From IMG/VR virus record IMGVR_UViG_3300023184_000025, positions 248,001 to 312,000 of that record: a stretch of DNA of 64,000 nucleotides, one strand, 5' to 3'. This document shows, piece after piece, positions 12,179 through 45,800 of the stretch. Position numbers and translations under genes: made by a program. Numbering within the stretch: position 1 is the stretch's first letter; each line of letters opens with the position of its first letter. The notes under the pieces were generated by a model, which searched no databases, was not told where the DNA came from, and saw nothing but the letters and a program-made list of their open reading frames with translations.

Positions 12179-12276
12179 ACTGGTTAAAAAACTTAATCAA
12201 TAGAATTAAACTTGAAATAAGATATAGAAAAAAACTCAAAGAGTTGCGTAAACGAGATCCATTTATCTACAAATGA
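12175..12276 (+). CDS. 33-aa basic peptide MNWLKNLINRIKLEIRYRKKLKELRKRDPFIYK (copy B; not in ORF track)
   Basis: ATGA overlaps with both neighbours; paralog of 11556. Confidence 0.85.
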   Translation: MNWLKNLINRIKLEIRYRKKLKELRKRDPFIYK

Positions 12277-13769
12277 AAAAATATTTAGGTATAAGTGCTG
12301 GATTCCATGATGCCGCTGTGTCTGTGATCACGGGTCACGGCGATATTTTATTTGCTGGTCACGCCGAACGCTACAGTAAAAACAAGCATGACCCTCATAT
12401 CAATCAAGACCTAATGGCCGAGGCATTGTTGCATGGTGAGCCGGATGTTGTTGCTTTTTACGAAAAACCTTGGCTTAAAAAGCTGAGAAACTTTTATGCA
12501 GGACAATATAATGAAGCATTGGATTTTACCGATATTACTGTTTGTAAGTATTTGCATAAACATGTACCTATATCTTTTCATAAGAAGCCACTATTTTTAC
12601 ATGCTGGACATCATTTGTCCCATGCTGCCGCAGGATTCCAAACCAGCCCCTTTACCAAGGCCACCGTTGTCGTTATAGATGCTATAGGAGAATGGGATAC
12701 TATTAGCATATGGGCCGCAACATATAATAGCAGTAATCAAGCAACATACAAAAAACTATGGAGTCAGAAGTATCCGCACAGTATTGGATTGTTTTATAGT
12801 GCAATTACTAAACGGATTGGACTACATCCAATGGATGAAGAATATATTACAATGGGTATGTCCGCCTGGGGCCGCTCTGTGTGGTATAATAAAATGAATT
12901 ATGATCTTGTTGCAGACCTTGATAAAATAGAATTTAAAAATAATTTACATCTTGGTCTGGATTCAACGTATTTAGAAGCTGGAACTAACGAAGACATTGC
13001 CGCATCAGCACAAGAATTAGTTGAAGAGTTAATTGGAAATGTAATGAAACTTGCCAGATCTTTTAACTGGAGCAATAATCTTGTTTATATGGGCGGTGTT
13101 GCTCTTAACTGTTTGGCAAATCGTAACCTAGGAGAATATTTTGAAAACATTTGGATTATGCCTAACCCTGGTGATGCTGGTAGTAGTCTCGGCGCTGCCG
13201 CTTATGCCTATCGTGGTAAAATCAATTGGAATAACGCTTATCTTGGCAGTGATATTAGCGGACCTTATCCTGTTAATGATATTATTGATGAGTTACTTTC
13301 TAGACAAATTGTCGGCGTGGCTTCCGGAAGAGCAGAGTTTGGTCCTAGAGCACTTGGCAACCGCAGTCTACTGGCAGACCCAAGAGGTTCCGAAATCAAG
13401 GACAAAGTAAATGAAATTAAACGTAGACAAAAGTTCAGACCATTTGCCCCAGTTATGTTGGAGGAACATGTTGATATGTATTTTGACATGCCTTGCGGTT
13501 TCAGTAACAGTAGGTATATGCAAGTCATCAGTCGCTGTAGGCATCCTGAGTTATTTCCTGCTATCATTCATCGGGATGGGACTAGTCGTGTTCAAACAGT
13601 ACCGCGAGATGGCTCAGGAATTAGACAGCTACTAGAAGCTTGGTATGCAAAGACTGGATGCCCGATGTTGCTTAATACCAGCTTAAATGTTAGAGGAGAG
13701 CCCATGGTAAATGACAGAGTAGACGCTGATCGTTTTGAATACCTTTATGGAGTTAAAGTATGCAGTTGA
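12273..13769 (+). CDS. O-carbamoyltransferase (CmcH/NodU/TobZ family)
   Basis: HDAA, AERY, HHLSHAA, GGVALNC, EFGPRALGNRS, RPFAP, LNTSLN. Confidence 0.95.
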   Translation: MKKYLGISAGFHDAAVSVITGHGDILFAGHAERYSKNKHDPHINQDLMAEALLHGEPDVVAFYEKPWLKKLRNFYAGQYNEALDFTDITVCKYLHKHVPISFHKKPLFLHAGHHLSHAAAGFQTSPFTKATVVVIDAIGEWDTISIWAATYNSSNQATYKKLWSQKYPHSIGLFYSAITKRIGLHPMDEEYITMGMSAWGRSVWYNKMNYDLVADLDKIEFKNNLHLGLDSTYLEAGTNEDIAASAQELVEELIGNVMKLARSFNWSNNLVYMGGVALNCLANRNLGEYFENIWIMPNPGDAGSSLGAAAYAYRGKINWNNAYLGSDISGPYPVNDIIDELLSRQIVGVASGRAEFGPRALGNRSLLADPRGSEIKDKVNEIKRRQKFRPFAPVMLEEHVDMYFDMPCGFSNSRYMQVISRCRHPELFPAIIHRDGTSRVQTVPRDGSGIRQLLEAWYAKTGCPMLLNTSLNVRGEPMVNDRVDADRFEYLYGVKVCS

Positions 13770-15247
13770 CAGATATACCCGTTAAGTTTAATTTTTCTAA
13801 ACATATCTTTGGAAAAAAGTTAGGCAATAAGATTGCACTAATTGACGATAGCAGTTCTATTAGCTACGAAATGCTCGAGCATAGATCTCGAGGATTTGCT
13901 AAAAGTCTCACAGACATGGGATTAACAAGAGAAGATCGTGTATTGATATTGATGCCGGACACTATCGAGTGCGGCATTGCAATACTGGGCTGTATATTAG
14001 GAGGATTTGTTCCAGTTATTGGAAACCCGTGGTCGCCTAAGAACACTATTTGTCATTTCATTGAATCCAGTGCCGCAAAAGTTATTATTTTTGCAAATAA
14101 TAGAACAACACAAAATCAATCCATTGACAGTTACCTTGCCGAAACTACGCATAAGCCCAAGCATGTGTTATCTATTGAACAAGTAAATATACTGAGTACT
14201 CCATCAAGTTTTGATCCTCCAACAACTCTCAGAGACGGCGAAGCATTTTGGTTATTTACTTCGGGTACCACAGGAGAATCTAAATCAGTTGTACATTCTC
14301 ATAAATCAATGATTGGTACAGGGTTAGGTTACGGAATCAATGTAGGTTATAAGTCTGACGATATTGTTTTTGCTACATCAAAATTGTTTTTTAGTTGGGG
14401 AATAAGTAGTGCATTTATATCTCCATTGACAGTGGGTGCCACAACAATATTGCATGGTAAATTACATACCCCTAGTACCGCGGCCAGGATATTTAAAAAA
14501 CACAAACCTACTTTATTTGGATCAGTTCCGTCTTTCTATGTTGGGTTGTTAAATGAAAATTTACCAATTAACTATGGGTCTTTAAGATTGTGTGTAAGTG
14601 CCGGTGAAGCAATAACATCTACTATGCAACAACAATGGCAGGAGTTAACAAAATTACCTATTATCGACGTGTACGGCAGTACAGAATTTCTACCAGTAAT
14701 TGTTTCAGGAAAATTATTACCAGGATTTTCAGGAATGGTAAAAGATGCTAACAATTGTGTTGTACAAAATCAAGTGGGAGAATTGTATATTGATGGTCCG
14801 TCAGTGGCTCTAAGATATCAAAATGAAACCAAAAAGTCCCAAGAAACTTTTATAGGTAAATGGTGTAGAACAGGAGACAAATTTATACAACATGGTGATA
14901 CATATCAATTTGTCGGGCGTTCTAAAGATATGCTAAGAGTAAATGCCAAATGGGTCAGCCCAACAGAAATAGAAAATTTATTAATATCGCACGAATTGGT
15001 ATTTGAAGCTGGTGTGTCGGGTATCGAGAACAGCGATGGGTTAACAGAGATTGTTGCATATATTGTACTAGCGCCCGATGTAGAAATCCCTAAAAATCTT
15101 GATCACCAATTAAAATCAGTGATCAAACACAAATTGGAGTATTTTAAGTGTCCTAAGTACATTCGTGTAACCAAGGAATTACCCAAAAATATCAATGGAA
15201 AAATACAAAGGTACTTGTTAAATGAAACATATGAACAATCAAATTAA
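13760..15247 (+). CDS. Aryl/acyl-CoA ligase (benzoate-CoA ligase-like, ANL family)
   Basis: FWLFTSGTTGESK, SKLFFSWG, SAGEA, YGSTE, TGD, GRSKD, LPKNINGK. Confidence 0.9.
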   Translation: MQLTDIPVKFNFSKHIFGKKLGNKIALIDDSSSISYEMLEHRSRGFAKSLTDMGLTREDRVLILMPDTIECGIAILGCILGGFVPVIGNPWSPKNTICHFIESSAAKVIIFANNRTTQNQSIDSYLAETTHKPKHVLSIEQVNILSTPSSFDPPTTLRDGEAFWLFTSGTTGESKSVVHSHKSMIGTGLGYGINVGYKSDDIVFATSKLFFSWGISSAFISPLTVGATTILHGKLHTPSTAARIFKKHKPTLFGSVPSFYVGLLNENLPINYGSLRLCVSAGEAITSTMQQQWQELTKLPIIDVYGSTEFLPVIVSGKLLPGFSGMVKDANNCVVQNQVGELYIDGPSVALRYQNETKKSQETFIGKWCRTGDKFIQHGDTYQFVGRSKDMLRVNAKWVSPTEIENLLISHELVFEAGVSGIENSDGLTEIVAYIVLAPDVEIPKNLDHQLKSVIKHKLEYFKCPKYIRVTKELPKNINGKIQRYLLNETYEQSN

Positions 15248-16469
15248 ATCCATTGTAGTCGTAGGAGGCGGCACAGCTGGCTGGATGAGTGCATGCTATA
15301 TGGTTAAGCAAGGATTTGATGTAACATTAGTTGAAAGCTCTAATGTTCCTACCATCGGAGTAGGTGAGAGCTGTTTGCCTGCAATAGGTATTTTCTGTGA
15401 TTCTCTCGGATTAAAAGAAGAAGAATGGATGCCCGAATCAAATGCCAGACATAAAATAGGGATCTTCCATTATAATTGGCTCAGAGAAAAAGATACTGTA
15501 TGGAAACACTTCTTCTGCTATGATCGTAACAATTGTAATGGACAATATTATTTAGAGTCAGGAATATTGCCGCCAGTTAAAGAAGGCAAGTATGCTTATC
15601 ATATTGATGCAATAGCGTTTGGACAAATGCTCCGGCGCCGAGTAGCAGAACCTGCTGGAGTAAAATATCTACAAGCACATATTGTTGATATTAAACAATA
15701 TGAAAATGGTTATGTTAGCGGACTTTTATTAGACAACGGGCAAACATTAAGCGCAGACTTTTATATTGATTGCTCGGGACCTACTAGACTTTTTGCAGAT
15801 AAAGTTGGAATTAAATTCAGCAAGTATGGAGATATACTTAATGATCGTGCTATGGTTTGTCCACAAGAACTTGATTCAGGCCCACAACCGCAATATACAA
15901 TTACCTATGCAGGAAAAGCAGGATGGATTTGGGACACAGGATTAGCTCATAGGAGAGGTTGTGGATATACTTACAGCAGTCAGTTTATCACTGACGAACA
16001 AGCGTGTAATGAATACCTAACATATTTTCCTAAAACAAACGTAGACAAACTTCGAGTCATCAAGTATGATAGCATGTATTCGCATAATCCTTTAGAAAAA
16101 AATGTATTAGCAGTTGGGCTGTCATCAGGATTTATAGAACCATTGGAAGCAACCAGCATATATCTTGTACAATACTACCTTGAAGCATTTGCAAGATTTG
16201 TTAACACCGGTCGAGATACAAAAATTTACAACAAAGCAACATTAAATTTAACCAAACAGTTATATGATTTTGTTTTGACCAATTACACATTGACTCAACG
16301 CAACGACACTGAACATTGGCGGTATTATCAAGATCTTGAACGTAAAATAAACACTAAAGAACTAACACGTTTTTGGGCTAACCAGCCGGACGTTGGCGTC
16401 TGGGAACTAACAAGAATGTTTTCACCTTTTAATTGGTGGAGCAAGGCCAAACACTTTGAGTTGTTGTGA
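15222..16469 (+). CDS. Flavin-dependent tryptophan halogenase-like protein
   Basis: GGGTAG, IGVGES, catalytic-Lys region ARHKIGI, IDCSG, GWIWDT, FIEPLEAT. Confidence 0.88.
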   Translation: MKHMNNQIKSIVVVGGGTAGWMSACYMVKQGFDVTLVESSNVPTIGVGESCLPAIGIFCDSLGLKEEEWMPESNARHKIGIFHYNWLREKDTVWKHFFCYDRNNCNGQYYLESGILPPVKEGKYAYHIDAIAFGQMLRRRVAEPAGVKYLQAHIVDIKQYENGYVSGLLLDNGQTLSADFYIDCSGPTRLFADKVGIKFSKYGDILNDRAMVCPQELDSGPQPQYTITYAGKAGWIWDTGLAHRRGCGYTYSSQFITDEQACNEYLTYFPKTNVDKLRVIKYDSMYSHNPLEKNVLAVGLSSGFIEPLEATSIYLVQYYLEAFARFVNTGRDTKIYNKATLNLTKQLYDFVLTNYTLTQRNDTEHWRYYQDLERKINTKELTRFWANQPDVGVWELTRMFSPFNWWSKAKHFELL

Positions 16470-16470: not shown

Positions 16471-17532
16471 TTATAGATAAGTCTCTAATCCGCCTCGACG
16501 GCGAATGTCTTGAGTACAACAACTGATGCCCCCGTCAAAGAAATATTTGTGTCGCAACTCTGAAATTATTGGTTCAATGTTATGTTTTTTGCAAAAATCA
16601 AAAACCATCTTATTATAAGAACTAAAGATAACATGGTGTTCGTCTAACACCAAACAGTTAACATCAAACACAGTTTCTTTAACATATCCAGTCCACTTGG
16701 TTAGATATGTATCAACAAATTTAGCAAACTCAGTGGTTGGATTCTGACCTTGTACATACCAGCGTCCATTAAAGTTTTCTTGACGAAATTTTCCAACCTC
16801 CATGGCAGCAAAAATACTTGCGTCCCAAATTTTACACACTTCCCATCCAGGAAAATTTTCTTTGTAGTTGATGTCACCATCGTGCATGGTACTTAATATT
16901 ACCCCTGGTTTTAATATAGCAAAAACACTATCCCCGTGCCCATTTGTAACAGCTCTACGAAGTTTATATCGGCTATCTAGTACATTGTCTTGAATCCATT
17001 CCATCTGACCATCAGTTAGCCACTCGCTGTTGTCAAAGAATATGTCTGTGCCTACACGAACAATACAACTGGCAACTGCGTCTACCATAACGTGGGTAGG
17101 GTCATATATGTTATTGCGTGTATCAAAATTTTTATTGTGCGGATCAATTATGCTGCCTGGCTGTTTCTGTTCGTAGTCACGACATATAGTGTTCATTTCC
17201 GCAACATTCAATACTCTTAATAATTTTTCACCTAGAGTAATTTGCCAATCTCTAGGTGTTAGTGGTGGGATTGGGACACCTCGATCTGTTATTTGTAAAC
17301 TTTGCCATTGTTTAATTTTTGGAAGATCTGGTCTTTTAACTACTGCTCCATACGATTCGATTACTTTTTGTAAATTATCTAAATCTTCTGCAGACTCTTC
17401 AAGTATTTTAGTCATTTGACCTTTAACTTGTTCATCCTGGATAAAGTTAAAATATTCTGGCGTATAAACACGACCAACAATTACTTCTTCAAGTGGTTGC
17501 CAACTGGTGTAACTATTAATAATATTAGACAT
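16471..17532 (-). CDS. Amidinotransferase (glycine / inosamine-phosphate amidinotransferase family)
   Basis: NSYTSWQPLEEVIVG, PRD, GHGD, FDVN, DGGISCCTQD. Confidence 0.9.
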   Translation of the reverse strand: MSNIINSYTSWQPLEEVIVGRVYTPEYFNFIQDEQVKGQMTKILEESAEDLDNLQKVIESYGAVVKRPDLPKIKQWQSLQITDRGVPIPPLTPRDWQITLGEKLLRVLNVAEMNTICRDYEQKQPGSIIDPHNKNFDTRNNIYDPTHVMVDAVASCIVRVGTDIFFDNSEWLTDGQMEWIQDNVLDSRYKLRRAVTNGHGDSVFAILKPGVILSTMHDGDINYKENFPGWEVCKIWDASIFAAMEVGKFRQENFNGRWYVQGQNPTTEFAKFVDTYLTKWTGYVKETVFDVNCLVLDEHHVIFSSYNKMVFDFCKKHNIEPIISELRHKYFFDGGISCCTQDIRRRGGLETYL

Positions 17533-18685
17533 TTAATTTTCCTATTATTCTATTTAACTCTTCATATCCTGTGGACAAAAACAATTTCTGGTTGTGTCTG
17601 ACATCTTCTATGCATTGTTGATAAATCAATTCTGGATTAGAATTGATTTGTGTTAGTGTATCGACAATTGCCATCCACCGATTAGTATTATCCTGTATAC
17701 TATCATATTTGTTGTCAATACAATGATCAAAGGTTTTATAACCACGTTCTCTAAGAGTTGCCAGACTATTTGATGAACCAACAATTATAAAAGGTTGACC
17801 AAATTTAATTGCTTTCCATGTTTTTTCTGTTAAAAACGTACCCCCACTTTGGTCAGCATCAAAGTGTGTTTCTAGTATAATATGTATGTAGGATTGTGTA
17901 TATAAACTTGCATTGACAATGTGATGATCGTTGTGTTCTTTTTCTGATTGATTGTCGCAACTATATGGACCATTGTTTACAAAATAATCTAGTTCATTTC
18001 TTATTTTTATATAATCAATTTGAATTGGGTTATCATCAAAGTTATCATCGATGATGCATTTTGTATTGTAACTCCATAAACTGTTTTCTAATAATCCTTT
18101 GCGTTTTAAGTCTGCCAGGCAAGTGGCTCTCCACCACTTGTGAGTCCTACATAGTGCAGTAAATGTATACTGACGTTTTTCTGTGTTTATAGGAACAGCC
18201 ACCTGATCTCTATTGATATAACGAAAGAAAAACTCATGATCAGAAAAGTAATTTTCAGCCGCTGAATTAGCACTTATAAACGTGTAACATTTTATATCAA
18301 TGTTATGTTGATGACACAAGTTGTCTAGTCTTTGTGTTATTCTAGTTGGGTTATCGCCTTCGTGATAATAAAATAAAACATGTATTTCTTTGTCTTTTAT
18401 CTTTTTTAATGTATTAACAGGAATTAAAGAAAAATAATCGCATTGAAAATCAAACCATCCTATTGATATTGGGTATACTGACCCCTGTGGAGAAACCAAT
18501 GCTGAGTGTATGTTATACGGAATTTTGTAATATTGAAAATAATATAAAAGACGCAATGGTACAGTATACGGCCAGTGACTGTCAAATTTTCTCCAACTAG
18601 GAGTATATGGAACTGCGTCAAGAGTTGCTAAGTTTGGATATCCAATACTTGGAGTAGACAACACATCATAACAAAAGTTGATCAT
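17525..18685 (-). CDS. Glycosyltransferase-like protein (GT10-like C-terminus)
   Basis: ILET..FLTEKTWKAIKFGQPF..GYKTF..YD; start MINFC overlapping upstream stop. Confidence 0.55.
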   Translation of the reverse strand: MINFCYDVLSTPSIGYPNLATLDAVPYTPSWRKFDSHWPYTVPLRLLYYFQYYKIPYNIHSALVSPQGSVYPISIGWFDFQCDYFSLIPVNTLKKIKDKEIHVLFYYHEGDNPTRITQRLDNLCHQHNIDIKCYTFISANSAAENYFSDHEFFFRYINRDQVAVPINTEKRQYTFTALCRTHKWWRATCLADLKRKGLLENSLWSYNTKCIIDDNFDDNPIQIDYIKIRNELDYFVNNGPYSCDNQSEKEHNDHHIVNASLYTQSYIHIILETHFDADQSGGTFLTEKTWKAIKFGQPFIIVGSSNSLATLRERGYKTFDHCIDNKYDSIQDNTNRWMAIVDTLTQINSNPELIYQQCIEDVRHNQKLFLSTGYEELNRIIGKLNV

Positions 18686-19800
18686 TAATAAAAATCTTTT
18701 TTTATTTTTTCTAACATACTTTGTGCTTCTTTCCAAAGTATTTCTTCAAAGCCGCCGTTGTAAAAGTGATTCCAGTTGTGCTCTATAACTTCTTGTGCTC
18801 GATTAAACAAATCTTTTTTGCCGCTTGGTGTTAATTCGTCCAGGCTACGTAACAGGCTACTGATACGTTCGATACGAACGCCATCGTTGGCATAGTCATA
18901 GCTCTCGTCCCAGATGCCTTCAAATGTACGAAATCCATAACTGCGTAAGTATTCTAAACTACCCTGAGTACCTACAATAACAAACGGCATGCCCAAGGCA
19001 ATGGGTTTGAATGTTTTTTCAGTTAGATGTAGTCGACGTCCTGTGTACACAGTTTCTGTGACCAAATACAATAAACTATCTGCGGCTTCGTCGAACAAAC
19101 TAAGCCAGCACGAATGCATAGGATGATCAGTTTCGCCAGCAAATTGTATAGGTAAAGGTGTGCAAGCAAACACTGACTCAATGTCAGGATAACGTTCAGC
19201 CAGGGGTTTGATAGCTTCATGTATACTGATATTTTCTACAGGACATATCTCAGGACAACTGATATGATTATCCAACATTTGATTTTTAAATATGTGATAT
19301 AACATTTCCAGTCGGTGTTTGCGTTCACCGGCAATAATACGATTTGGAGCAATAAATGTTTTGGTGATCTTTCTCTTATCAGGTGTAGTAATTAGGAATG
19401 TTTTGTCGTACCCACGATACCAATCCAGTGCCGCCCACCCATGAAAAAAATAATAATAAGATTTCCAATTGTATTTTTTACACAGCTCCTCCACTGACTC
19501 ACTGTTAAACTCACTGGTTACTATTCCGTGGCACCGCCTTGCATCAACATAACTAATATTATCCAATGGATTTCTATCATAAACTTCAGCAAATAAATCG
19601 GCGTATATATCCAAATGAATTGGCTCTTGGTCGTGAAAGAATATATAATTAATCATATCTATGCTATTACCGCCAAAGTGAATCAAACTGTCAGGGTTGG
19701 TATTGCCCGGCGGATCGCAACAATACAATTTTGTATTTGGCACTTGATTTTTTATAAATGGCCAAAAAGTATTACCATAAATTTCGTCAATTCTAATCAT
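18685..19800 (-). CDS. Glycosyltransferase-like protein (GT10-like C-terminus)
   Basis: LVTET..LTEKTFKPIALGMPF..GFRTF..DESYD. Confidence 0.55.
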   Translation of the reverse strand: MIRIDEIYGNTFWPFIKNQVPNTKLYCCDPPGNTNPDSLIHFGGNSIDMINYIFFHDQEPIHLDIYADLFAEVYDRNPLDNISYVDARRCHGIVTSEFNSESVEELCKKYNWKSYYYFFHGWAALDWYRGYDKTFLITTPDKRKITKTFIAPNRIIAGERKHRLEMLYHIFKNQMLDNHISCPEICPVENISIHEAIKPLAERYPDIESVFACTPLPIQFAGETDHPMHSCWLSLFDEAADSLLYLVTETVYTGRRLHLTEKTFKPIALGMPFVIVGTQGSLEYLRSYGFRTFEGIWDESYDYANDGVRIERISSLLRSLDELTPSGKKDLFNRAQEVIEHNWNHFYNGGFEEILWKEAQSMLEKIKKDFY

Positions 19801-21430
19801 GTTTGATATATTCTATATAGGAAAAAAACCAGGGTTATTTGTGCATGAATGTGCAGTAACAAGCACGGAGCAGGCCTGTGAACTGAGTCGCACTCGATAT
19901 TGTTGGGTTGTAAATTACTTATCGAGCTATTCAGAGTTTAATTTTCTTTGGGAGCCGTCGCCCTGGCAAGCAAATCAACAACATGTATTTCCTAGTCAGT
20001 GGCAAAAAGACTCAGGTACATATCTAGTACCAAAAACTGGATTCACAGATATCAATTACCGCACAGACATGGTTGTTCAGACTAGACAATCTAGTGATGT
20101 ATACTTAATAGATCATATGGATAATTCTCTAGAATTGTCATTGAATACTCTGTCAGAAAAAATCACAATTAAAAAAGTGGTTAGATATTTTGACAATTAT
20201 CTTGACACTCTAACACGCATTGCTAAAACAGCCAACAATGACAATCTTGAATACGTTTGGATTTGCTCTACAATTTGTGATTATACTAATTTTGACTTTA
20301 CATGGCATCCTGATCCTTGGCAAAAAGAGTTGTTACATGTATTTCCTAGTAATGAACAAAAGTTTGGTGACACATTTTTAATGCATGTGCCAACGTTTAT
20401 TGAAAGAATCAAGGGTAGAGAATTACTTGAGTGGTATGATTTAAATTTTGTTGATTTACAGATCAAACGTAATCCAGTTCCAATAATTCAACATTCCTGT
20501 GACACACAAGTTACTGCACTAGATCCTGACTCTTTTTATGGTCCAGTAGGATTGTTTACTGTTCAAAATCCTCCAGCGGTGTACCCAACTGTTAATCTAT
20601 GGAGAGAACGAACCAAGACAGTTATTACATTGTCCCCAAACAACGATTGTGCGTTGATTCCACGAACAGCATTGTCTACAATCAACGCACAAGTCTACGA
20701 TTATCCGTACATTGATAAAACTCAGATTAGTCAAGATCTTGCATTGCAAGATATTGTGTTTATTAGCTACGACGAACCCGAAGCTGATGCAAACTATGAA
20801 AAATTGTTAACAAAATTTCCTCGAGCAAAACGTGTGCATGGCGTGGTTGGAATGGAAAATGCTCTGGCCGAAGCCGCTAGAGTTAGTCAAACACCTTGGT
20901 ACTTTGCAGTATTTGGAAAGACAGAGTTACACCCTGATTTTGATTTTACATTCCAACCAGACTATTTCCAACAACCTAAACATTATATCTTTTACAGCGA
21001 GAATCGTGTAAACAAATTGGTCTACGGAGAAATGGCTGTTATTATGTACAATTGCAATCTTATATTAGATAACATTGGCCAGGAATTTGGGTTAGATTAT
21101 ACAATGAGTTTCCCACACGAGGTTGTGCCAGTTATTAGCACCTATGGTAATTTTAACACAAGTCCATATCAAACCTGGAGAACTGCATTCAGAGAAGTCA
21201 GTAAATTATATGATATACAGTCTCGAACGCCAACAATTGAAACTGATTATAGAATTAATATTTGGGAAACAGTCGCCGACGGCAACTATGCTGAGTGGGC
21301 ATTGATAGGAGCCAAAGATGGCCGAGAATTTTATCTAGCATACAAAGATAACTATGAATACAGAAAAAATAGTTTTGACTGGCAATGGTTAAGAAATTAT
21401 TTTTCTGAACGTTACGGCAACGTTAGTTAA
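19799..21430 (+). CDS. Phage glycosyltransferase-like protein with three internal repeats
   Basis: Repeats FNFLWEPSPWQ..HVFPS / FDFTWHPDPWQ..HVFPS / FDFTFQPDYFQ; DIVFISYDEP. Confidence 0.5.
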   Translation: MFDIFYIGKKPGLFVHECAVTSTEQACELSRTRYCWVVNYLSSYSEFNFLWEPSPWQANQQHVFPSQWQKDSGTYLVPKTGFTDINYRTDMVVQTRQSSDVYLIDHMDNSLELSLNTLSEKITIKKVVRYFDNYLDTLTRIAKTANNDNLEYVWICSTICDYTNFDFTWHPDPWQKELLHVFPSNEQKFGDTFLMHVPTFIERIKGRELLEWYDLNFVDLQIKRNPVPIIQHSCDTQVTALDPDSFYGPVGLFTVQNPPAVYPTVNLWRERTKTVITLSPNNDCALIPRTALSTINAQVYDYPYIDKTQISQDLALQDIVFISYDEPEADANYEKLLTKFPRAKRVHGVVGMENALAEAARVSQTPWYFAVFGKTELHPDFDFTFQPDYFQQPKHYIFYSENRVNKLVYGEMAVIMYNCNLILDNIGQEFGLDYTMSFPHEVVPVISTYGNFNTSPYQTWRTAFREVSKLYDIQSRTPTIETDYRINIWETVADGNYAEWALIGAKDGREFYLAYKDNYEYRKNSFDWQWLRNYFSERYGNVS

Positions 21431-22541
21431 AAAAATCCATTACAGCTCTGGCCACAATTTCTGCCTGTGCAGTGGTAATTTGTGCATGCACTGGTAAACT
21501 CAAGCATGAGTCTGCTAGCCTTTCACTATTTGGAAAACTATCTGGGCCTGATACCCTAACATACACTGGTTGTTTATGTAACGCTAATGGAAATTGTATA
21601 CCAGTTTCAATTCCACGACTCAGAAGAAATTCTTTTAATTCATTTCTACGATCTGTTGCAATAACAAATTGATTATACACGTGAGTACTCACATCACTGT
21701 TTACTTTTGGTAATTGTATTTTATCACAACTTGATAAAATATTGTAATAAACAGATGCATTCTCTGTACGTCGTTGATTCCAGGTATCTAAGTGATCTAG
21801 TTTGGCTGATAAAATTGCTGCCTGCATAGAATCTAGTCTTTCATTCCAGCCAATGGTCTCGTGTACGTATTTTTCTTTTCTTCCATGATCTCTAAGCATT
21901 TTAACAATTTTAACTAATTCTTGACGGCCTGTAACTGCACCTGCATCTCCCATGGCACTTAAATTTTTTCCTGGATAAAAACTAAAACATGTTAAATCTG
22001 CTTGGCTGCCAATTGAATTTCCAAGGTATTTACATCCTGAACTCTGAGCCGCATCTTGTATGATTGGAATGCCGTTGGCGATTTTTTTGAGCTTTTTCAT
22101 ATCCACGGTTTGACCATACAGATCCACCACAATAATTGCTTTGGTTTTATTTGTAAGTGTTGATTCAATTTGATCAAGGTCCATGGTATAGTATTGATCA
22201 ATGTCGATAAAACGAGGACGAGCACTTAGTTGACTAGCGCACTCAGCTGACGCAACAAAGCTCATACTTGGAACAAGTACTTCGTCAGCAGGACGAACTC
22301 CTACTGCCCATAGACATAGCATTAACGCACTGGTTCCACTGCTTACACCTGCGCAGTCTTCGGATTGGGTATAGTCTTTCCAGGCAGTTTCAAAATTCAA
22401 AACTTCTTCCCCGCCAATAAATGAACTGTTGGTAATGCAACGTTCAATAGCCTGATCAACAGGAGTTTTTACTTCTAGGTATTCGCTATATAAATTTGCG
22501 TATGGTATTGTTATCGGCATTTTACTGGTCCTTGGTTCCAC
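21423..22541 (-). CDS. DegT/DnrJ/EryC1/StrS PLP sugar aminotransferase (DesV/EryCI-like)
   Basis: SSGTSAL, DAAQS, SFYPGKNLSAMGDAG, NERLDSMQAA. Confidence 0.93.
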   Translation of the reverse strand: MEPRTSKMPITIPYANLYSEYLEVKTPVDQAIERCITNSSFIGGEEVLNFETAWKDYTQSEDCAGVSSGTSALMLCLWAVGVRPADEVLVPSMSFVASAECASQLSARPRFIDIDQYYTMDLDQIESTLTNKTKAIIVVDLYGQTVDMKKLKKIANGIPIIQDAAQSSGCKYLGNSIGSQADLTCFSFYPGKNLSAMGDAGAVTGRQELVKIVKMLRDHGRKEKYVHETIGWNERLDSMQAAILSAKLDHLDTWNQRRTENASVYYNILSSCDKIQLPKVNSDVSTHVYNQFVIATDRRNELKEFLLSRGIETGIQFPLALHKQPVYVRVSGPDSFPNSERLADSCLSLPVHAQITTAQAEIVARAVMDFFN

Positions 22542-23893
22542 GAGATTCCAAATTTTTCATCGTCTCGAGCTTGATTAATTAATCTACTTACCACATGGTC
22601 GAATGCATCTAAGTATCCAACATCAGGTGGTAACGGTCTTATTGTTTTTTTAGAGTTAACAAATTCTTGCACTACAGTCTCTATACTACTATTAACTGTA
22701 TTTCCAATTATGTATCTTTCAGCGCCCGGGCGATCTAAAAATCCACTTTCGTGATATACATATACATCTCCCTTGACATCAACTGCCACAGCCACTTGAG
22801 GGAAGCTAGTTGGCACCATTTCTTTCCAGGAAATCATTGACAATGGTCCTGAATTTTTTCCATGTACCAGCGGTTCTAGTGCATATCCAAAATCCCAATG
22901 TGTAGTAGGCCATTTATTTGTTTTAAAATCTTTAATCAAATCAAAAATATCAACAAGATGCACTCTTTCTTCGTCGCTGATGATGCGAACATTTTGGCTA
23001 AAGTCTTCCCGCAATGTTACAAAATCTACAGGACGCTTGGTCCGTGAATTAATATAGTCAATAATGTTTATTAACTTAACAACATCCTTTGAGTGCCCAG
23101 GAAGTATAATCCAGTTAACTCCCACACGAACGTTGTCCGTTGAATTGATATACTCAATGATATTTTCAACAATACGATGATAGCTTTCAGAATGGCGAGT
23201 CACTTTAAATGCACTTTGTTCATCAACCCCGTACAGACTAAAACGAACAGCATGAAGGTCTTTCATTCCAGGATGTTGTTCTATGTATTTCCGAGTCATC
23301 ATATAGCCGTTGGTGTACAATTGCATTTTGTATCCACGTTCGGCGCCGTAGGTAATAATGTTGCCTAGATACTTGTTAGTCAGCGGCTCTAGACCCCCAC
23401 TAATGCGAAAACGGTCATCCCAGAATGCATCAGTTTTAATATCTTGATCAATGATCTGTTTGAAAATATCAAATCCATACTGCTCAAATTTCTTTTCGTA
23501 TTTGGCCACAGGATTTCGACCGCAGAAGTTGCAGTAAAACATACAGCTCATACCAGTGTACAGTCCAATACGATTTGGGTACATATAACTATGATCAATG
23601 GCCGCATGCAATGATCCGTTTGTTAGCAATGGAGTAATTGTGTTGGTCCAATATTTTGTACCGCCACCGTGATACAATATGTAATTCTGAGCTGGTTGAT
23701 TTTCTCTGAGCCCACTAGATATTATTAGTAGTTCGTTGGCAGATATTGATAGCTGTTTTGCAATTTCTCTTTGACTAATAAACGGATCATCAGCCAGTAA
23801 CTTACACACCTGTTGAGACACTGAGTCTAGGTGTGTAATATCTGCATTTAGCGGAGTAGCGACGTCGCTGTGTGTGTAACCTAATCTTGTCAT
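22511..23893 (-). CDS. desII: DesII-like radical SAM NDP-4-amino-4,6-dideoxyhexose deaminase
   Basis: YWTNTITPL..YP..IGLYTGMSCMFYCNFC, SGGLEPLTN, LYTNG, SLYG, TLREDFS, DVKGDVYVY.ESGF, YLDAFDHVV match DesII as I recall it. Confidence 0.85.
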   Translation of the reverse strand: MTRLGYTHSDVATPLNADITHLDSVSQQVCKLLADDPFISQREIAKQLSISANELLIISSGLRENQPAQNYILYHGGGTKYWTNTITPLLTNGSLHAAIDHSYMYPNRIGLYTGMSCMFYCNFCGRNPVAKYEKKFEQYGFDIFKQIIDQDIKTDAFWDDRFRISGGLEPLTNKYLGNIITYGAERGYKMQLYTNGYMMTRKYIEQHPGMKDLHAVRFSLYGVDEQSAFKVTRHSESYHRIVENIIEYINSTDNVRVGVNWIILPGHSKDVVKLINIIDYINSRTKRPVDFVTLREDFSQNVRIISDEERVHLVDIFDLIKDFKTNKWPTTHWDFGYALEPLVHGKNSGPLSMISWKEMVPTSFPQVAVAVDVKGDVYVYHESGFLDRPGAERYIIGNTVNSSIETVVQEFVNSKKTIRPLPPDVGYLDAFDHVVSRLINQARDDEKFGISWNQGPVKCR

Positions 23894-24993
23894 TTAACTA
23901 TATCAATCAGTTGATCTGCAATGTATTCCACTTCTAAATCTGTCAGCTCGGGGTATATGGGTAAACTCAATACTCGCCTGGCTAATGCACTGGCTTTGGA
24001 AAACATCCCAGGGCCAACAATCGATTCATATAATGGAATTTCGTGCAACGGAAGTTCGTAGTGTACTTTTGTTTCAATTTTTCTAAGCATTAGTTCTTTT
24101 TTAACTTCATTACGATTGTCTACGTCAACAACAAACTTGTGATTACAATGGTCAACATAATTTGATTTGTCAGTTAATGTTCTGATGTTTTGTTTAGAAA
24201 AATGCTCAATCCAATATCCTGCAATTTTACTTCTACGTTGCTGCCATTGATCAATGTATTTTGTTTTAACCATCATAGTAGCACAGTCAACTTCACTCAT
24301 ACGACTATTACTGCCAGTCATGGTATGTCCAGGTTTTCCGTTGTCCCTCCAACCCAACGCATATTCTTGCAACTTTGAATCATCAGTGACCACTGCACCA
24401 CCATTGCCGTAACAACTTAGATTTTTCATTGGATCGAAACTAATAGCTGTTGCATGTCCTATTCGTCGACCACGATCACTCAGCCAATGTTGTGCGGCAT
24501 CTTCAATTATGGTATTTGCCATAAGTTCCCAACCGTTGCGTATAGACGCACCATACAGCCCAACTAACACAATAGCATTGTAATTAACTAATTCAGGTAT
24601 TGCATAGTCTCGATCCATTATTCCATATGCATCTGTATCAACAATAGTAACGTCCCATCCTGAACGCAAAAATGCATTGATGGTAGCTGGATATGTAATT
24701 GCCGGAACTAACACATGGCAACGGTGGCCCCAGTCTCTTGATATGTAGTACTGTGCAATTATTTCCAATGCCTGTGTTCCACTATGACAAGTTATGGCAT
24801 ATTTGCTATTGTTTTTCTTGGCTAACCATGTTTCGAATTCTTTGGTATAGATTCCATTCATGAGATTACCAGATCGTAATACACAATCTGTAGCATCTAG
24901 AATTTCTTCTTTGATGTTGTTATACTGTTTTTGGAGCCCAGTAAAGGGAATTGTTAAGCCAGCTGTAGTAATTTTGAAATCCTTCGTGAACAT
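23890..24993 (-). CDS. DegT/DnrJ/EryC1/StrS PLP sugar aminotransferase
   Basis: HSGTQAL, EDAAQ, SFDPMKNL..GNGG, NSRMSE. Confidence 0.92.
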   Translation of the reverse strand: MFTKDFKITTAGLTIPFTGLQKQYNNIKEEILDATDCVLRSGNLMNGIYTKEFETWLAKKNNSKYAITCHSGTQALEIIAQYYISRDWGHRCHVLVPAITYPATINAFLRSGWDVTIVDTDAYGIMDRDYAIPELVNYNAIVLVGLYGASIRNGWELMANTIIEDAAQHWLSDRGRRIGHATAISFDPMKNLSCYGNGGAVVTDDSKLQEYALGWRDNGKPGHTMTGSNSRMSEVDCATMMVKTKYIDQWQQRRSKIAGYWIEHFSKQNIRTLTDKSNYVDHCNHKFVVDVDNRNEVKKELMLRKIETKVHYELPLHEIPLYESIVGPGMFSKASALARRVLSLPIYPELTDLEVEYIADQLIDIVK

Positions 24994-25888
24994 CGACTTT
25001 GGGATCGTAACCTAACATGGCACGAGCCTGATTAATATTTAACGCACCGCGACTGGGGAAGTCTGCATCTTTATCCCTGCACTCAATCTCGCCGCTGCCT
25101 ACTATACTTACAATCATTTCTGCCGCTTGTAATAAAGACACAGAGTGTGATTTAGTAATGTTAAATGTGTGATTTTTAGCACCGGGCATGGTGGCCGCGG
25201 CAACAATGCCATCGGCGGCATCGTCAACATAGGTAAAGTCTAAGGTTTCGTTGGCACCGTTTACTTTTAATGTGCCACCACGCATGGCAGTAAGCATAAA
25301 TTTAGCAACCACACGATCTTCCACATCCAGGGGTCCATACACAGCACTGGGACGAATGATAACAAATTCCATGCCAGTTCGTCGAGCATAGTCTTTGACC
25401 AACCACTCCCCTGCCAGCTTCATAATACCATACTGTCCCTGAGGGTTGCAGACAGCATCTTCTTCAACTTGATCAGTAAAGTCGCCATATACCATTGAAC
25501 TACTAATGTAAACAAATCGACGAACACCGTGCTTTTTGGCACTCTCAAGCAGATTAATCAAGCCCTCCATCATAACACGACTGCCATTGGCTGGATTGGC
25601 ATTGACAACTTTTTGCCTTGGAAAACTTGCCATGTGTACAACCACTTCGGGTTGTTGCACCTGCATCACATAATCAACTGTGTCTGCAGTCTCAATAGAT
25701 GCATTATAAAAACCAGGATGGGGGATTTTTTTAATACGCTCTTCCATCAAATAGTCCAACTCACTTTGTGGAATAATACCATAGGTTGTTTTGTTATCAA
25801 TGATTGAGGTTGTATGGTCAAGATTTTGTAATCTTGCTATGACGTTGTGACCAATAAGGCCTAACCCACCTGTTACTAGTATTTTCAT
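24920..25888 (-). CDS. NAD-dependent NDP-sugar epimerase/dehydratase (extended SDR)
   Basis: TGGLGLIG, SSSMVYG, YGIMK, VYGP, DFTYVDD. Confidence 0.92.
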   Translation of the reverse strand: MKILVTGGLGLIGHNVIARLQNLDHTTSIIDNKTTYGIIPQSELDYLMEERIKKIPHPGFYNASIETADTVDYVMQVQQPEVVVHMASFPRQKVVNANPANGSRVMMEGLINLLESAKKHGVRRFVYISSSMVYGDFTDQVEEDAVCNPQGQYGIMKLAGEWLVKDYARRTGMEFVIIRPSAVYGPLDVEDRVVAKFMLTAMRGGTLKVNGANETLDFTYVDDAADGIVAAATMPGAKNHTFNITKSHSVSLLQAAEMIVSIVGSGEIECRDKDADFPSRGALNINQARAMLGYDPKVDVHEGFQNYYSWLNNSLYWAPKTV

Positions 25889-37715: not shown

Positions 37716-37885
37716 GTAATATTTCCTTAAAAAGTTGAATTGTAATGCTTGTGGAAGAATTCCACTTACAGTAGGCGTTCTGTTATAGTATAACAGTAAA
37801 GACATCACTATGTCAAGTGTCAATTTGATCTGACGTCGGCCCTTGCCGGCGTTGCAAAATTATTTATAAATTGAAATAACTTGGT

Positions 37886-39825: not shown

Positions 39826-39922
39826 TTTTATTTTCCTTAAAAAAAGAATGAGTTTTAAATCATTCACTATTATGTATCAGTGTTTGCAACAATGTTAATT
39901 AAAATTGGGGGTATTTTGGTCC

Positions 39923-39947
39923 AAAAAAAACCCGCCGAAGCGGGTTC
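39923..39947 (-). terminator. Intrinsic terminator ending the tmRNA
   Basis: aacccgc-ttcg-gcgggtt + U-tract. Confidence 0.9.
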
Positions 39948-39949
39948 TG

Positions 39950-45607: not shown

Positions 45608-45682
45608 TGGCCGGTCCTGAGAGGATCGAACTCCCACCCTCTGTTTCGAAGACAGAGATGATATCCATTTCACCAAGGACCG
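45608..45682 (-). tRNA. tRNA-Arg(TCG)
   Basis: Cloverleaf, loop ctTCGaa, CCA encoded. Confidence 0.9.
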
Positions 45683-45685
45683 ATG

Positions 45686-45759
45686 TGGTGCTCTCAACAA
45701 GAATTGAACTTGTGTTTCGCCCTTACCAAGGGCGTGTAATGCCATTATACTATGAGAGC
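45686..45759 (-). tRNA. tRNA-Thr(GGT)
   Basis: Cloverleaf, loop ttGGTaa. Confidence 0.9.
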
Positions 45760-45800
45760 AGAATTTGTAATATTGATAAAGTTTTAATGTAAATAAAAAC

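What the first reader, a model, noticed from the sequence alone, without database searches (positions are those of the whole stretch)
21423..25888. Phage-encoded desosamine-like deoxyamino-sugar pathway with a DesII homolog
Seen: four overlapping genes in the order SDR epimerase/dehydratase, DegT aminotransferase, DesII-like radical SAM, second DegT aminotransferase. Established: in TDP-desosamine synthesis a 4,6-dehydratase, DesI (C4 transaminase), DesII (radical C4 deamination to a 3-keto-4,6-dideoxy sugar) and DesV (C3 transaminase) act in this order; DesII is mainly known from actinomycete macrolide clusters. No DesVI N,N-dimethyltransferase is visible in the window. Inference: the phage makes an NDP-3-amino-3,4,6-trideoxyhexose whose amine may instead be amidinated, carbamoylated or acylated by neighbouring enzymes.
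Basis: partly seen in the sequence, partly recalled or inferred. Interest (0 to 1): 0.8.

Follow-up and report, generated by a model that had tools for sequence, protein, structure and literature searches.

The report
Jumbo-phage amino-deoxy-sugar operon with DesII-like enzyme
A giant freshwater bacteriophage carries a conserved four-gene operon built like the antibiotic-sugar (desosamine) pathway, with a radical enzyme between two aminotransferases; its parts are different versions of the known enzymes, and its neighbours would decorate the resulting amino sugar and transfer it to an unknown target.

Summary
Four overlapping minus-strand genes at 21423-25888 encode an extended SDR, a DegT aminotransferase, a DesII-family radical SAM enzyme and a second DegT. 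The window is a freshwater jumbo phage.

- The SDR has an invariant S-S-M/YxxxK site, not the T-D-E of 4,6-dehydratases, so 6-deoxygenation is unsupported.
- The first DegT is not DesI-like. Both DegTs group with a DesV (C3) ortholog.
- The radical SAM enzyme keeps every DesII SAM/cluster motif and the E408/D456 equivalents. It scores below the DesII equivalog cut-off (341 vs 450 bits) and lies outside the macrolide DesII branch, among members mostly fused to GFO/IDH/MocA oxidoreductases.

The DegT–radical SAM–DegT sandwich is conserved in divergent freshwater and marine phage contigs. It sits next to virus-only GT-B-like transferases, a repeat protein, an amidinotransferase and a carbamoyltransferase.

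Best reading (about 0.45): a desosamine-like transaminate, radical deaminate, transaminate route to an NDP-3-amino-3,4-dideoxyhexose, 6-OH probably kept, then amidinated or carbamoylated and transferred to an unknown acceptor. No DesII homolog was found in cultured phages. I rate it a new variant of a known kind.

The parts
24920..25888 (-). Extended SDR (322 aa). It has an NAD-binding TGGLGLIG, a catalytic S-S-S-M (129-132) and Y153-x3-K157. It is epimerase/oxidoreductase-like, not dehydratase-like.
   Evidence: Pfam PF01370 E 1.4e-44. Best PDB hits are UDP-hexose and UDP-GlcA 4-epimerases and UXS. The motif is invariant in phage orthologs. TIGR01181 scores 117 bits against a cut-off of 365.
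23890..24993 (-). DegT1: a PLP sugar aminotransferase (367 aa) on a fast-evolving branch of the DesV/QdtB type. The PLP lysine is present (SFDPMKNL).
   Evidence: PF01041 E 4.5e-58. PDB hits are 7B0D, QdtB, DesV and WbpE; no DesI hit at E<1e-10. It is 30% identical to DegT2. See the tree. An ortholog (55%) occupies the same position in marine locus L040.
22511..23893 (-). DesII-family radical SAM enzyme (460 aa). It has C117/C121/C124, the GGE motif G166-G167-E169, the ribose motif R217/S219/Y221, and D297. E382 matches DesII E408 and D429 matches DesII D456.
   Evidence: TIGR04426 E 9.6e-102, 341 bits against a cut-off of 450. PDB 8HZV E 3e-68. Residue roles are from PMC11434129. Invariance is shown. 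Tree placement is shown.
21423..22541 (-). DegT2: a DesV-like sugar 3-aminotransferase type (372 aa from GTG 22541; the likely ATG start is at 22520).
   Evidence: PF01041 E 4.9e-97. PDB hits: DesV 2OGA 261 bits, QdtB 232, WbpE 213, DesI 2PO3 81. It forms a clade with a DesV ortholog.
19799..21430 (+). u543: a virus-only protein with three internal 'FDFxWxPxPW...HxF' repeats. It is always convergent with DegT2. It is a candidate GT-A-like transferase (weak evidence).
   Evidence: Conserved next to the cassette in all phage variants. No Pfam, PHROG or PDB sequence hit. The AF2 model is poor (pLDDT 58.7) and gives weak GT-A/nucleotidyltransferase-fold hits. The atlas lead to GT2/GT92 scores 0.82-0.87.
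18685..19800 (-). u371: a virus-only GT-B-fold glycosyltransferase-like protein, paralogous to u403 and u380.
   Evidence: AF2 model pLDDT 78.6, pTM 0.79. Foldseek hits are all GT-B glycosyltransferases (BshA, SenB, TarM, OtsA, FucT13; GT1 and fucosyltransferase clusters), with modest TM of 0.35-0.69. The shared motif is E...TEKxxKxIxxGxP.
17525..18736 (-). u403: a second GT-B-like paralog.
   Evidence: Alignment A3. Conserved synteny.
16471..17532 (-). u353: an amidinotransferase of the AGAT/StrB1/SxtG/HsvA family. Its C-terminal GGISCCTQDIRRRG aligns with the catalytic-Cys motif of AGAT.
   Evidence: Profile search against PDB: AGAT E 8.7e-19, StrB1 8.8e-15, SxtG and HsvA. It is 59-65% identical in L008, L038 and L040.
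12273..13769 (+). Carbamoyltransferase of the NodU/CmcH type, conserved in most phage variants of the island.
   Evidence: PF02543 and PF16861. NodU model 130 bits. Synteny.
2347..10497 (+). Array of five N-terminal-twitch radical SAM paralogs (2347-4296, 5262-6758, 6634-8004, 8001-9206, 9193-10497) plus the GT-B-like paralog u380 (4280-5422). A sixth radical SAM paralog lies at 27660-28868 (-).
   Evidence: NF033640 scores 291-392 bits, above its cut-off of 170. The array is conserved beside the cassette in L005-L009.
13760..16469 (+). Accessory genes found only in the window-type phages: a benzoate-CoA-ligase-like adenylating enzyme (13760-15247) and a flavin-dependent halogenase (15222-16469).
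   Evidence: PF00501, with TIGR02262 at 362 bits. PF04820 E 4.5e-91. Present in L001-L004 only.

Best explanation
The four genes are the core of a conserved jumbo-phage sugar-tailoring operon. It uses the logic of desosamine synthesis (put an amine on one carbon, remove it by radical chemistry to leave a deoxy-keto sugar, transaminate the new ketone), but with differently derived parts.

Proposed steps (all inferred; none shown):
1. The SDR, which has an epimerase-type Ser/Tyr/Lys site and no dehydratase acid/base pair, oxidises C4 of a host NDP-hexose without 4,6-dehydration. Alternatively the host supplies the keto-sugar.
2. DegT1 aminates that ketone.
3. The DesII-family radical SAM enzyme abstracts the neighbouring carbinol hydrogen and eliminates ammonia, giving a 3-keto-4-deoxy sugar.
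4. DegT2, which is DesV-like, aminates C3.

The product would be an NDP-3-amino-3,4-dideoxyhexose with the 6-OH probably retained. The adjacent amidinotransferase and carbamoyltransferase would then decorate it. The virus-specific GT-B-like proteins (u371, u403, u380) and the repeat protein u543 would transfer it to a soluble acceptor that remains unknown: a virion protein, DNA or a small molecule.
For: - The gene order and overlaps are tight.
- The DesII family assignment is strong, with every SAM/cluster motif and the E408/D456 equivalents conserved.
- An aminotransferase gene overlaps the start of the radical SAM gene here, in the other phage loci read upstream of it (L008, L009, L038/L039, L040, L042) and in a genuine desosamine-type locus, L036.
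- The DegT1–radical SAM–DegT2 sandwich is kept in freshwater lineages at 60-81% identity and in a marine lineage at 51% identity of the radical SAM enzyme.
- DegT2 is DesV-like. Both DegTs keep the PLP lysine.
- According to PMC11434129, whether DesII deaminates or dehydrogenates is set mainly by the C4 substituent of the substrate. An upstream aminotransferase therefore argues for deamination.
- The SDR motif S-S-M/YxxxK is invariant.
- The conserved neighbours are GT-B-like transferases, an amidinotransferase and a carbamoyltransferase.
- None of the biosynthetic proteins has a predicted membrane segment.
Against: - The radical SAM enzyme scores below the DesII equivalog cut-off. It lies outside the branch holding the bona fide DesII ortholog, and most of its family is fused to or adjacent to GFO/IDH/MocA oxidoreductases without aminotransferases.
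- It keeps N260 and H433. These are near-invariant in the family but replaced in DesII-type sequences, which hints at a different substrate or leaving group.
- DegT1 is of the 3-aminotransferase type by homology, not the DesI type.
- One phage lineage (L038, L039, L042) has lost DegT1 and keeps only the DegT2 ortholog.
- An epimerase-type SDR normally does not release its 4-keto intermediate.
- Marine locus L040 has no SDR gene in the 1.5 kb available upstream.
- No sugar-1-phosphate nucleotidyltransferase was found in the window.
- No activity has been measured.
Confidence: 0.45

Rival explanations
1. The SDR is an NDP-glucose 4,6-dehydratase, DegT1 stands in for DesI, the radical SAM enzyme for DesII and DegT2 for DesV. 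The product is an NDP-3-amino-3,4,6-trideoxyhexose (N-desmethyl-desosamine). A variant has the host RmlB supply dTDP-4-keto-6-deoxyglucose.
For: The gene order matches the desosamine pathway. The best NCBIfam model for the SDR is nominally dTDP-glucose 4,6-dehydratase. Marine variant L040 has no SDR gene in the 1.5 kb available upstream of the cassette, which would fit a host-supplied keto-sugar.
Against: - The SDR has S-S-M where 4,6-dehydratases have T-D-E, and this is invariant in orthologs.
- It scores 117 bits against a cut-off of 365.
- Its best solved relatives are 4-epimerases and UXS.
- DegT1 scores 67 bits against 650 for the DesI model and clusters with DesV-type enzymes.
- If the host supplied the keto-sugar, the conserved, translationally coupled SDR would have no role.
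Confidence: 0.15
2. The radical SAM enzyme acts directly on a hydroxylated sugar, as most of its family probably does. It would be either a C4 dehydratase or a C3 dehydrogenase; DesII itself dehydrogenates TDP-quinovose and partly dehydrates TDP-fucose. The SDR is a plain 4-epimerase that sets the C4 configuration. DegT2 aminates the resulting 3-ketone. DegT1 installs a separate amine or is partly redundant.
For: - The SDR site is epimerase-type.
- Family members fused to or beside GFO/IDH/MocA reductases lack adjacent aminotransferases.
- The phage enzyme shares N260 and H433 with those members, not with DesII-type sequences.
- The L038/L042 lineage works with only SDR, the DegT2 ortholog and the radical SAM enzyme.
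- Alternative DesII chemistries are documented in PMC11434129.
Against: A DegT gene overlapping the start of the radical SAM gene is conserved across the phage lineages read upstream, and in true desosamine loci. Two flanking aminotransferases are ancestral in the phage clades. A second amination would need another oxidation step that is not encoded in the cassette.
Confidence: 0.25
3. The enzymes do not tailor a free NDP-sugar. They tailor a sugar already attached to an acceptor, as in aminoglycoside or nucleoside-antibiotic tailoring. The island would then make a cationic small molecule decorated with guanidino, carbamoyl and (in this phage) halogenated aroyl groups.
For: - The enzyme set resembles an aminoglycoside tool-kit: a StrB1-type amidinotransferase, a NodU/TobZ-type carbamoyltransferase, twitch radical SAM enzymes and DegT enzymes.
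- The window adds an adenylating enzyme, a halogenase and a CPA2-type membrane transporter next to the cassette.
- All enzymes are soluble.
- A cultured cyanophage with DegT, radical SAM and amidinotransferase genes has been described as carrying 'antibiotic synthesis genes' (PMC12801897).
Against: - No cyclitol synthase, core scaffold enzyme, carrier protein or acyltransferase was detected in the window.
- The adenylating enzyme, halogenase and transporter are not conserved among related phages.
- DesII, DesV, QdtB and WbpE, the nearest characterised relatives, all act on NDP-sugars.
Confidence: 0.15

Closest known systems
TDP-desosamine pathway of Streptomyces venezuelae (DesIV 4,6-dehydratase, DesI, DesII, DesV, DesVI)
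   Same: Both have a radical SAM enzyme of the DesII family flanked by DegT aminotransferases. The aminotransferase gene upstream overlaps the radical SAM gene, as in the desosamine-type locus L036. The downstream aminotransferase is DesV-like. All DesII SAM-binding motifs and the E408/D456 equivalents are kept.
   Different: - The SDR lacks the dehydratase Asp/Glu pair.
- The first aminotransferase is DesV-type, not DesI-type.
- The radical SAM enzyme is only about 31% identical to a DesII ortholog, scores below the equivalog cut-off and sits on another branch.
- There is no N,N-dimethyltransferase, no EryCIII-type glycosyltransferase and no nucleotidyltransferase.
- The element is a phage, not an actinomycete macrolide cluster.
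GFO/IDH/MocA–DesII-like fusion proteins and gene pairs in glycan loci of Thaumarchaeota, Pelagibacteraceae, Acidobacteria and others (uncharacterised)
   Same: These are the nearest cellular relatives in the tree. They share N260 and H433 and all catalytic residues with the phage enzyme.
   Different: They are coupled to an NAD(P) oxidoreductase rather than to aminotransferases. They probably perform radical dehydration or oxidation followed by ketoreduction. Their function is untested.
AprD4/AprD3 (radical SAM dehydratase plus reductase for 3'-deoxygenation in apramycin); named from my own knowledge and from its mention in PMC11434129
   Same: A radical SAM lyase creates a deoxy-keto sugar that a second enzyme then processes.
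   Different: It belongs to a different radical SAM family, acts on a pseudodisaccharide rather than an NDP-sugar, and eliminates water rather than ammonia. Homology was not tested here.
WbpB/WbpE and QdtA/QdtB routes to 3-amino sugars
   Same: DegT2, and more weakly DegT1, are closest to these 3-aminotransferases.
   Different: Those pathways make the 3-ketone with an NAD-dependent oxidase or a 3,4-ketoisomerase, not a radical SAM enzyme. They do not deoxygenate C4.
Virus-encoded amino-sugar pathways (Mimivirus UDP-viosamine and bacillosamine; named from my own knowledge) and the 'antibiotic synthesis genes' of cyanophage S-SCSM2R (PMC12801897)
   Same: A large virus carries its own sugar aminotransferases and glycosyltransferases. 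S-SCSM2R has DegT-family, radical SAM and amidinotransferase genes, and its amidinotransferase is a distant homolog of u353.
   Different: No DesII-family enzyme is present in S-SCSM2R or any other record of the cultured-phage collection. The Mimivirus pathway uses a true 4,6-dehydratase and no radical chemistry.

Membership tests
DesII (TIGR04426, dTDP-4-amino-4,6-dideoxy-D-glucose ammonia-lyase) | Radical SAM core: CX3CX2C cluster motif, GGE motif, ribose motif (R/S/Y) and the beta-6 Asp | tested here: met
   C117/C121/C124, G166-G167-x-E169, R217/S219/Y221 and D297 align to DesII C141/C145/C148, G187-E190, R238/S240/Y242 and D323.
DesII (TIGR04426, dTDP-4-amino-4,6-dideoxy-D-glucose ammonia-lyase) | Active-site carboxylates E408 and D456 (the D456A mutant is inactive) | tested here: met
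   E382 and D429 align to them. D429 is conserved in all 45 family sequences examined and E382 in 42 of 45, so they do not separate deaminases from other members.
DesII (TIGR04426, dTDP-4-amino-4,6-dideoxy-D-glucose ammonia-lyase) | Score at or above the curated equivalog cut-off | tested here: not met
   341.1 bits against a cut-off of 450.
DesII (TIGR04426, dTDP-4-amino-4,6-dideoxy-D-glucose ammonia-lyase) | Placement in the branch that holds enzymes from desosamine-type loci | tested here: not met
   The phage clade (99*) nests in a 100*-supported clade with thaumarchaeal and marine sequences. The DesII ortholog P0155 (locus L036) sits elsewhere, sister to a GFO fusion. This was a quick IQ-TREE search and deep nodes are partly unresolved.
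DesII (TIGR04426, dTDP-4-amino-4,6-dideoxy-D-glucose ammonia-lyase) | SAM-dependent deamination of an NDP-4-amino sugar | not testable with these tools
   This needs an anaerobic enzyme assay.
NDP-glucose 4,6-dehydratase (RmlB/DesIV, TIGR01181) | Catalytic Thr-Asp-Glu before the VYG turn, plus YxxxK | tested here: not met
   The sequence is Y-I-S-S-S-M-V-Y-G with Y153-G-I-M-K157. It has no Asp/Glu and is invariant in five phage orthologs. The T-D-E signature is from established knowledge of RmlB.
NDP-glucose 4,6-dehydratase (RmlB/DesIV, TIGR01181) | Score at or above the curated cut-off | tested here: not met
   117.3 bits against 365.1.
DesI (TIGR04427, C4 aminotransferase) | Score at or above the cut-off, or grouping with a DesI ortholog | tested here: not met
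   DegT1 scores 67 bits against 650. It scores 39 bits to the L036 DesI ortholog but 122 bits to the DesV ortholog. The tree places it with DesV-type enzymes at 96/95*.
DesV/QdtB-type sugar 3-aminotransferases (DegT family) | PLP lysine, and closest relatives are characterised 3-aminotransferases | tested here: met
   DegT2 scores DesV 261, QdtB 232 and WbpE 213 bits. DegT1 scores 7B0D 145, QdtB 135 and DesV 129 bits. The lysine in SF(Y/D)PxKNL is present in both. Regiochemistry itself was not tested.
Amidinotransferase (AGAT/StrB1/SxtG/HsvA) | Profile similarity over both halves, and the C-terminal catalytic Cys motif | tested here: met
   E 8.7e-19 to AGAT. GGISCCTQDIRRRG aligns to GGFHCWTCDVRRRG.
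GT-B glycosyltransferases (for u371, u403 and u380) | Two-Rossmann-domain GT-B fold | tested here: inconclusive
   The model has pLDDT 78.6. All top Foldseek hits are GT-B enzymes with probability about 1.0, but TM is 0.35-0.69 and the best E-value against PDB is 3.7e-4. There was no sequence-level hit.

The most novel reading that the evidence does not exclude
A clade of uncultivated freshwater and marine jumbo phages encodes a complete, virus-specific route to a cationic 3-amino-3,4-dideoxy sugar that is guanidinylated and carbamoylated. The route uses a DesII-family radical enzyme recruited independently of actinomycete antibiotic pathways. The phages would attach this sugar, through glycosyltransferase families found only in viruses, to a phage macromolecule (virion surface or DNA), or release it as an aminoglycoside-like compound. 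Either outcome would be a previously unknown type of viral glycan, hypermodification or metabolite.
Probability: 0.3. Interest if true: 0.85.

Novelty: new variant of a known kind. Interest (0 to 1): 0.62.

Why it matters
DesII chemistry has been studied almost only in macrolide antibiotic clusters. Three points follow from finding it here.

- **Family breadth.** A conserved, differently assembled version in a widespread group of lake and ocean jumbo phages, plus a large unstudied set of GFO-fused relatives in abundant marine bacteria and archaea, shows that radical sugar deoxygenation is far broader than the literature suggests.
- **Phage biology.** The island is about 27 kb and holds sugar tailoring genes, three virus-only transferase paralogs, an amidinotransferase, a carbamoyltransferase and six twitch radical SAM enzymes. 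It is one of the larger biosynthetic investments seen in a phage. It points to a virus-made cationic glycan or metabolite whose target is unknown. That target could bear on host recognition, defence evasion or DNA packaging.
- **Enzymology.** The operon offers a natural test of what decides deamination versus dehydration or dehydrogenation in this family. Positions N260 and H433 are candidates.

Tried and rejected
- Nucleotide and protein searches of the cassette and of the DesII-like protein against the cultured-phage collection gave no match. The same was true for the GT-B-like u371. A megablast of 30-54 kb hit only tRNA genes.
- Literature searches for DesII plus phage, and for jumbo phage plus radical SAM plus glycosyltransferase, found nothing relevant. 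Two searches for the PDB codes 8VR2 and 7B0D returned unrelated papers. The functions of those two solved relatives therefore remain unknown to me.
- u543 could not be identified. It has no Pfam, PHROG or PDB profile hit. Its AF2 model is too poor to trust (pLDDT 58.7, pTM 0.29). The GT-A-like hits are only a lead.
- I first inferred from L038/L039 that DegT1 is a late addition. I rejected this after the marine locus L040 showed a DegT1 ortholog in the same position. Loss in one lineage is the better reading.
- DNA hypermodification as the target was considered because the island always sits beside ThyX or ThyA+DHFR and dCMP deaminase. ThyX and ThyA+DHFR replace each other at the same position, which argues for ordinary thymidylate synthesis. 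No hydroxymethylase was seen in the window. The idea is not supported and not excluded.
- The genome-contig scan used narrow peptide patterns and so missed actinomycete DesII genes. A bona fide ortholog was instead recognised by its locus context.
- No solved or characterised BlsE-type sequence was available through the tools, so the relation to that enzyme was not tested.

Full report
**1. The observation**

The stated region holds four contiguous minus-strand ORFs: 25888-24920 (322 aa), 24993-23890 (367 aa), 23893-22511 (460 aa) and 22541-21423 (372 aa). They overlap by 74, 4 and 31 nt. The last ORF more likely starts at the ATG at 22520, which leaves a 10-nt overlap.

Pfam and NCBIfam assign them as follows:
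- an extended SDR (PF01370, E 1.4e-44)
- a DegT aminotransferase (PF01041, E 4.5e-58)
- a radical SAM protein whose only strong model is TIGR04426 rSAM_desII (E 9.6e-102)
- a second DegT (E 4.9e-97)

**2. The element**

The segment is 100% identical to IMG/VR contigs of 262 and 345 kb, and 96% and 80-81% relatives exist on other viral contigs.

The window holds 28 tRNA genes and a permuted, beta-type tmRNA. It also holds ThyX, a CobS-like ATPase with a VWA partner, GroEL, an exonuclease, dCMP deaminase, MazG and homing endonucleases, all matching phage families.

The cassette DNA is found in lake, river and freshwater metagenomes from nine studies. It is a freshwater jumbo phage. No DesII homolog exists in the collection of cultured phage genomes.

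**3. The radical SAM enzyme**

It matches solved DesII (8HZV) at E 3e-68. I compared the alignment with the residue roles in the DesII structure paper (PMC11434129). The correspondences are:

| Phage enzyme | DesII | Role |
|---|---|---|
| C117/C121/C124 | C141/C145/C148 | cluster cysteines |
| G166-G167-x-E169 | G187-E190 | GGE motif |
| R217/S219/Y221 | R238/S240/Y242 | ribose motif |
| D297 | D323 | beta-6 Asp |
| E382 | E408 | proposed base |
| D429 | D456 | D456A is inactive |

It is therefore a competent member of the DesII family. Four results argue against calling it DesII itself:
- It scores 341 bits against the equivalog cut-off of 450.
- It is about 31% identical to a bona fide ortholog. 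I recognised that ortholog by its locus, L036, which holds a methyltransferase, a DegT overlapping DesII, an EryCIII-type GT, a second DegT and a nucleotidyltransferase.
- An exhaustive search found only 52 cluster representatives at E<1e-30. Most are C-terminal domains of about 850-aa proteins whose N-terminal half is a GFO/IDH/MocA oxidoreductase. Others sit next to a separate GFO gene in glycan loci of Thaumarchaeota and other bacteria. A genome scan found family members in Pelagibacteraceae, Thaumarchaeota, Acidobacteria, Elusimicrobia, Omnitrophota and others.
- In the tree the phage proteins form a 99*-supported clade. That clade nests in a 100*-supported group with thaumarchaeal and marine sequences. 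The true DesII ortholog lies elsewhere, sister to a GFO fusion.

E382 and D429 are conserved across the whole family (E382 in 42 of 45 sequences, D429 in all 45), so they do not discriminate function. Two near-invariant positions do differ. N260 (44/45) and H433 (43/45) are replaced only in DesII-type sequences, and the phage enzyme keeps them.

**4. The SDR**

Its best solved relatives are UDP-hexose and UDP-glucuronate 4-epimerases and UDP-xylose synthase. The alignments show Y-I-S-S-S-M-V-Y-G followed by Y153-G-I-M-K157.

From established knowledge of RmlB and DesIV, 4,6-dehydratases have Thr-Asp-Glu at the position of S-S-M, and decarboxylases have a Glu there. The S-S-M motif is invariant in five divergent phage orthologs. 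TIGR01181 scores 117 bits against a cut-off of 365.

The dehydratase signature was tested and is not met. Nothing in the window encodes 6-deoxygenation.

**5. The aminotransferases**

Both keep the PLP lysine.
- DegT2 matches DesV (2OGA) at 261 bits, QdtB at 232 and WbpE at 213, but DesI (2PO3) at only 81.
- DegT1's best solved relatives are also 3-aminotransferases: 7B0D 145, QdtB 135 and DesV 129 bits. DesI is not reached at E<1e-10.
- Against the L036 pair, DegT1 scores 122 bits to the DesV ortholog and 39 to the DesI ortholog.
- In a careful tree, the DegT1 clade, the DegT2 clade and the DesV ortholog form one group (96/95*), with the DesI ortholog outside. DegT1 sits on a long branch.

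**6. Conservation and neighbours**

The cassette recurs in contigs whose radical SAM enzyme is 44-81% identical.
- The marine locus L040 has a DegT1 ortholog (55%), the radical SAM enzyme (51%) and a DegT2 ortholog (43%) in the same order. The sandwich is therefore ancestral.
- One lineage (L038, L039, L042) has SDR, a DegT2 ortholog and the radical SAM enzyme only.

The following genes are always or usually adjacent:
- **u543 (19799-21430).** A virus-only protein with three internal repeats, convergent with DegT2. Its model is poor, and only weak GT-A/nucleotidyltransferase-like leads exist.
- **u371 and u403, plus the paralog u380.** Virus-only proteins. The u371 model (pLDDT 78.6) hits only GT-B glycosyltransferases.
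- **u353.** A clear amidinotransferase: E 8.7e-19 to AGAT, with the catalytic Cys motif aligned.
- **A NodU-type carbamoyltransferase**.
- **An array of N-terminal-twitch radical SAM paralogs.** The window has six.

The adenylating enzyme, the halogenase and the CPA2-type transporter are confined to the window-type phages. None of the biosynthetic proteins has a predicted membrane segment, so the acceptor is probably soluble. The island always sits beside ThyX or ThyA+DHFR. These replace one another at the same position, which I read as ordinary thymidylate synthesis and shared genome architecture rather than as evidence for DNA modification.

**7. Mechanism**

The structure paper concludes that whether DesII deaminates or dehydrogenates depends mainly on whether C4 carries an ammonium or a hydroxyl. 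What feeds the enzyme therefore matters most.

A DegT gene overlaps the start of the radical SAM gene in every phage locus where the upstream side is available, and in the true desosamine locus. A second DegT follows in most. I therefore favour a transaminate, radical deaminate, transaminate route (confidence 0.45). The 4-ketone would come from the SDR acting as a non-dehydrating oxidase, or from the host. The product would be an NDP-3-amino-3,4-dideoxyhexose that probably keeps its 6-OH, a plausible site for the conserved O-carbamoyltransferase type. The amine is a plausible amidination site. All steps are inferred.

The rivals are:
- direct action on a hydroxylated sugar, with the SDR as a plain epimerase (0.25)
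- tailoring of an already attached sugar in an aminoglycoside-like product (0.15)

**8. Comparison and novelty**

It works like the desosamine pathway. It fails membership of DesII sensu stricto, of DesI and of the 4,6-dehydratases. Its DegT2 fits the DesV type.

I found no report of a DesII-family enzyme in a phage. A cultured cyanophage, S-SCSM2R, has DegT, radical SAM and amidinotransferase genes that its authors called antibiotic synthesis genes (PMC12801897). It has no DesII homolog and only a distant amidinotransferase homolog.

I rate this a new variant of a known kind, with interest about 0.6. The product, the acceptor and the biological role are open.

Noticed in passing
window 45608-52178 and 59751-59992; tmRNA at 39900-40233 (-): There are 28 tRNA genes covering all 20 amino acids (three tRNA-Met type), plus a permuted two-piece tmRNA of the betaproteobacterial type with tag ANDEQFALAA. 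This is a large translation tool-kit for a phage and a hint to a betaproteobacterial host.
   Followed up: partly
window 2347-10497 (+) and 27660-28868 (-): Six paralogous radical SAM enzymes carry an N-terminal twitch/SPASM domain (NF033640, 291-392 bits). Five lie in tandem and are conserved beside the sugar cassette in related phages. Their function is unknown. Only very distant homologs occur in cultured jumbo phages (Vibrio K566/K567, Ralstonia RsoM2USA).
   Followed up: partly
window 13760-16469 (+): A benzoate-CoA-ligase-like adenylating enzyme and a flavin-dependent (Trp-halogenase family) halogenase sit inside the island. They occur only in the window-type phages. The 96% relatives L003 and L004 carry a second halogenase paralog.
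   Followed up: partly
window 25890-27071 (-): A CPA2-type Na+/H+-exchanger-like membrane protein (8 predicted hydrophobic segments) is inserted directly upstream of the SDR. It is absent at this position in all other related loci.
   Followed up: partly
window 36780-37823 (-): A TctC (tripartite tricarboxylate transporter receptor, 'Bug') family protein is encoded by the phage. The family is expanded in Betaproteobacteria.
   Followed up: no
proteins P0122-P0149; loci L010 and L037: Most cellular members of the DesII family are fusions of GFO/IDH/MocA (N-terminal) with a DesII-like domain (C-terminal), or adjacent gene pairs, in glycan loci. I know of no characterisation of this enzyme type. 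It probably performs radical dehydration or oxidation followed by ketoreduction.
   Followed up: partly
window 22511-23893 (-), residues N260 and H433: These two positions are near-invariant across the DesII family (44/45 and 43/45). They are replaced only in DesII-type sequences: S or A at 260 and Q at 433. They are candidate determinants of substrate or leaving-group specificity.
   Followed up: partly
window 19799-21430 (+): u543 contains three internal repeats of an 'FDFxWxPxPW....HxF' motif. It belongs to a large virus-only family (atlas clusters of 50-370 members) that also occurs in longer forms (738-864 aa) in related loci.
   Followed up: partly
window 56123-57742 (-), 42296-42808 (-), 41503-42147 (-), 62170-62613 (-): The phage encodes a GroEL chaperonin, a dCMP deaminase, a class-I glutamine-amidotransferase-like protein and a MazG pyrophosphohydrolase.
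   Followed up: no
L042 19742-20497 (-): A related phage locus carries a truncated-looking UDP-glucose/GDP-mannose dehydrogenase family gene (251 aa) next to the carbamoyltransferase. The pathway might therefore start from a UDP-hexuronic acid in some lineages.
   Followed up: no
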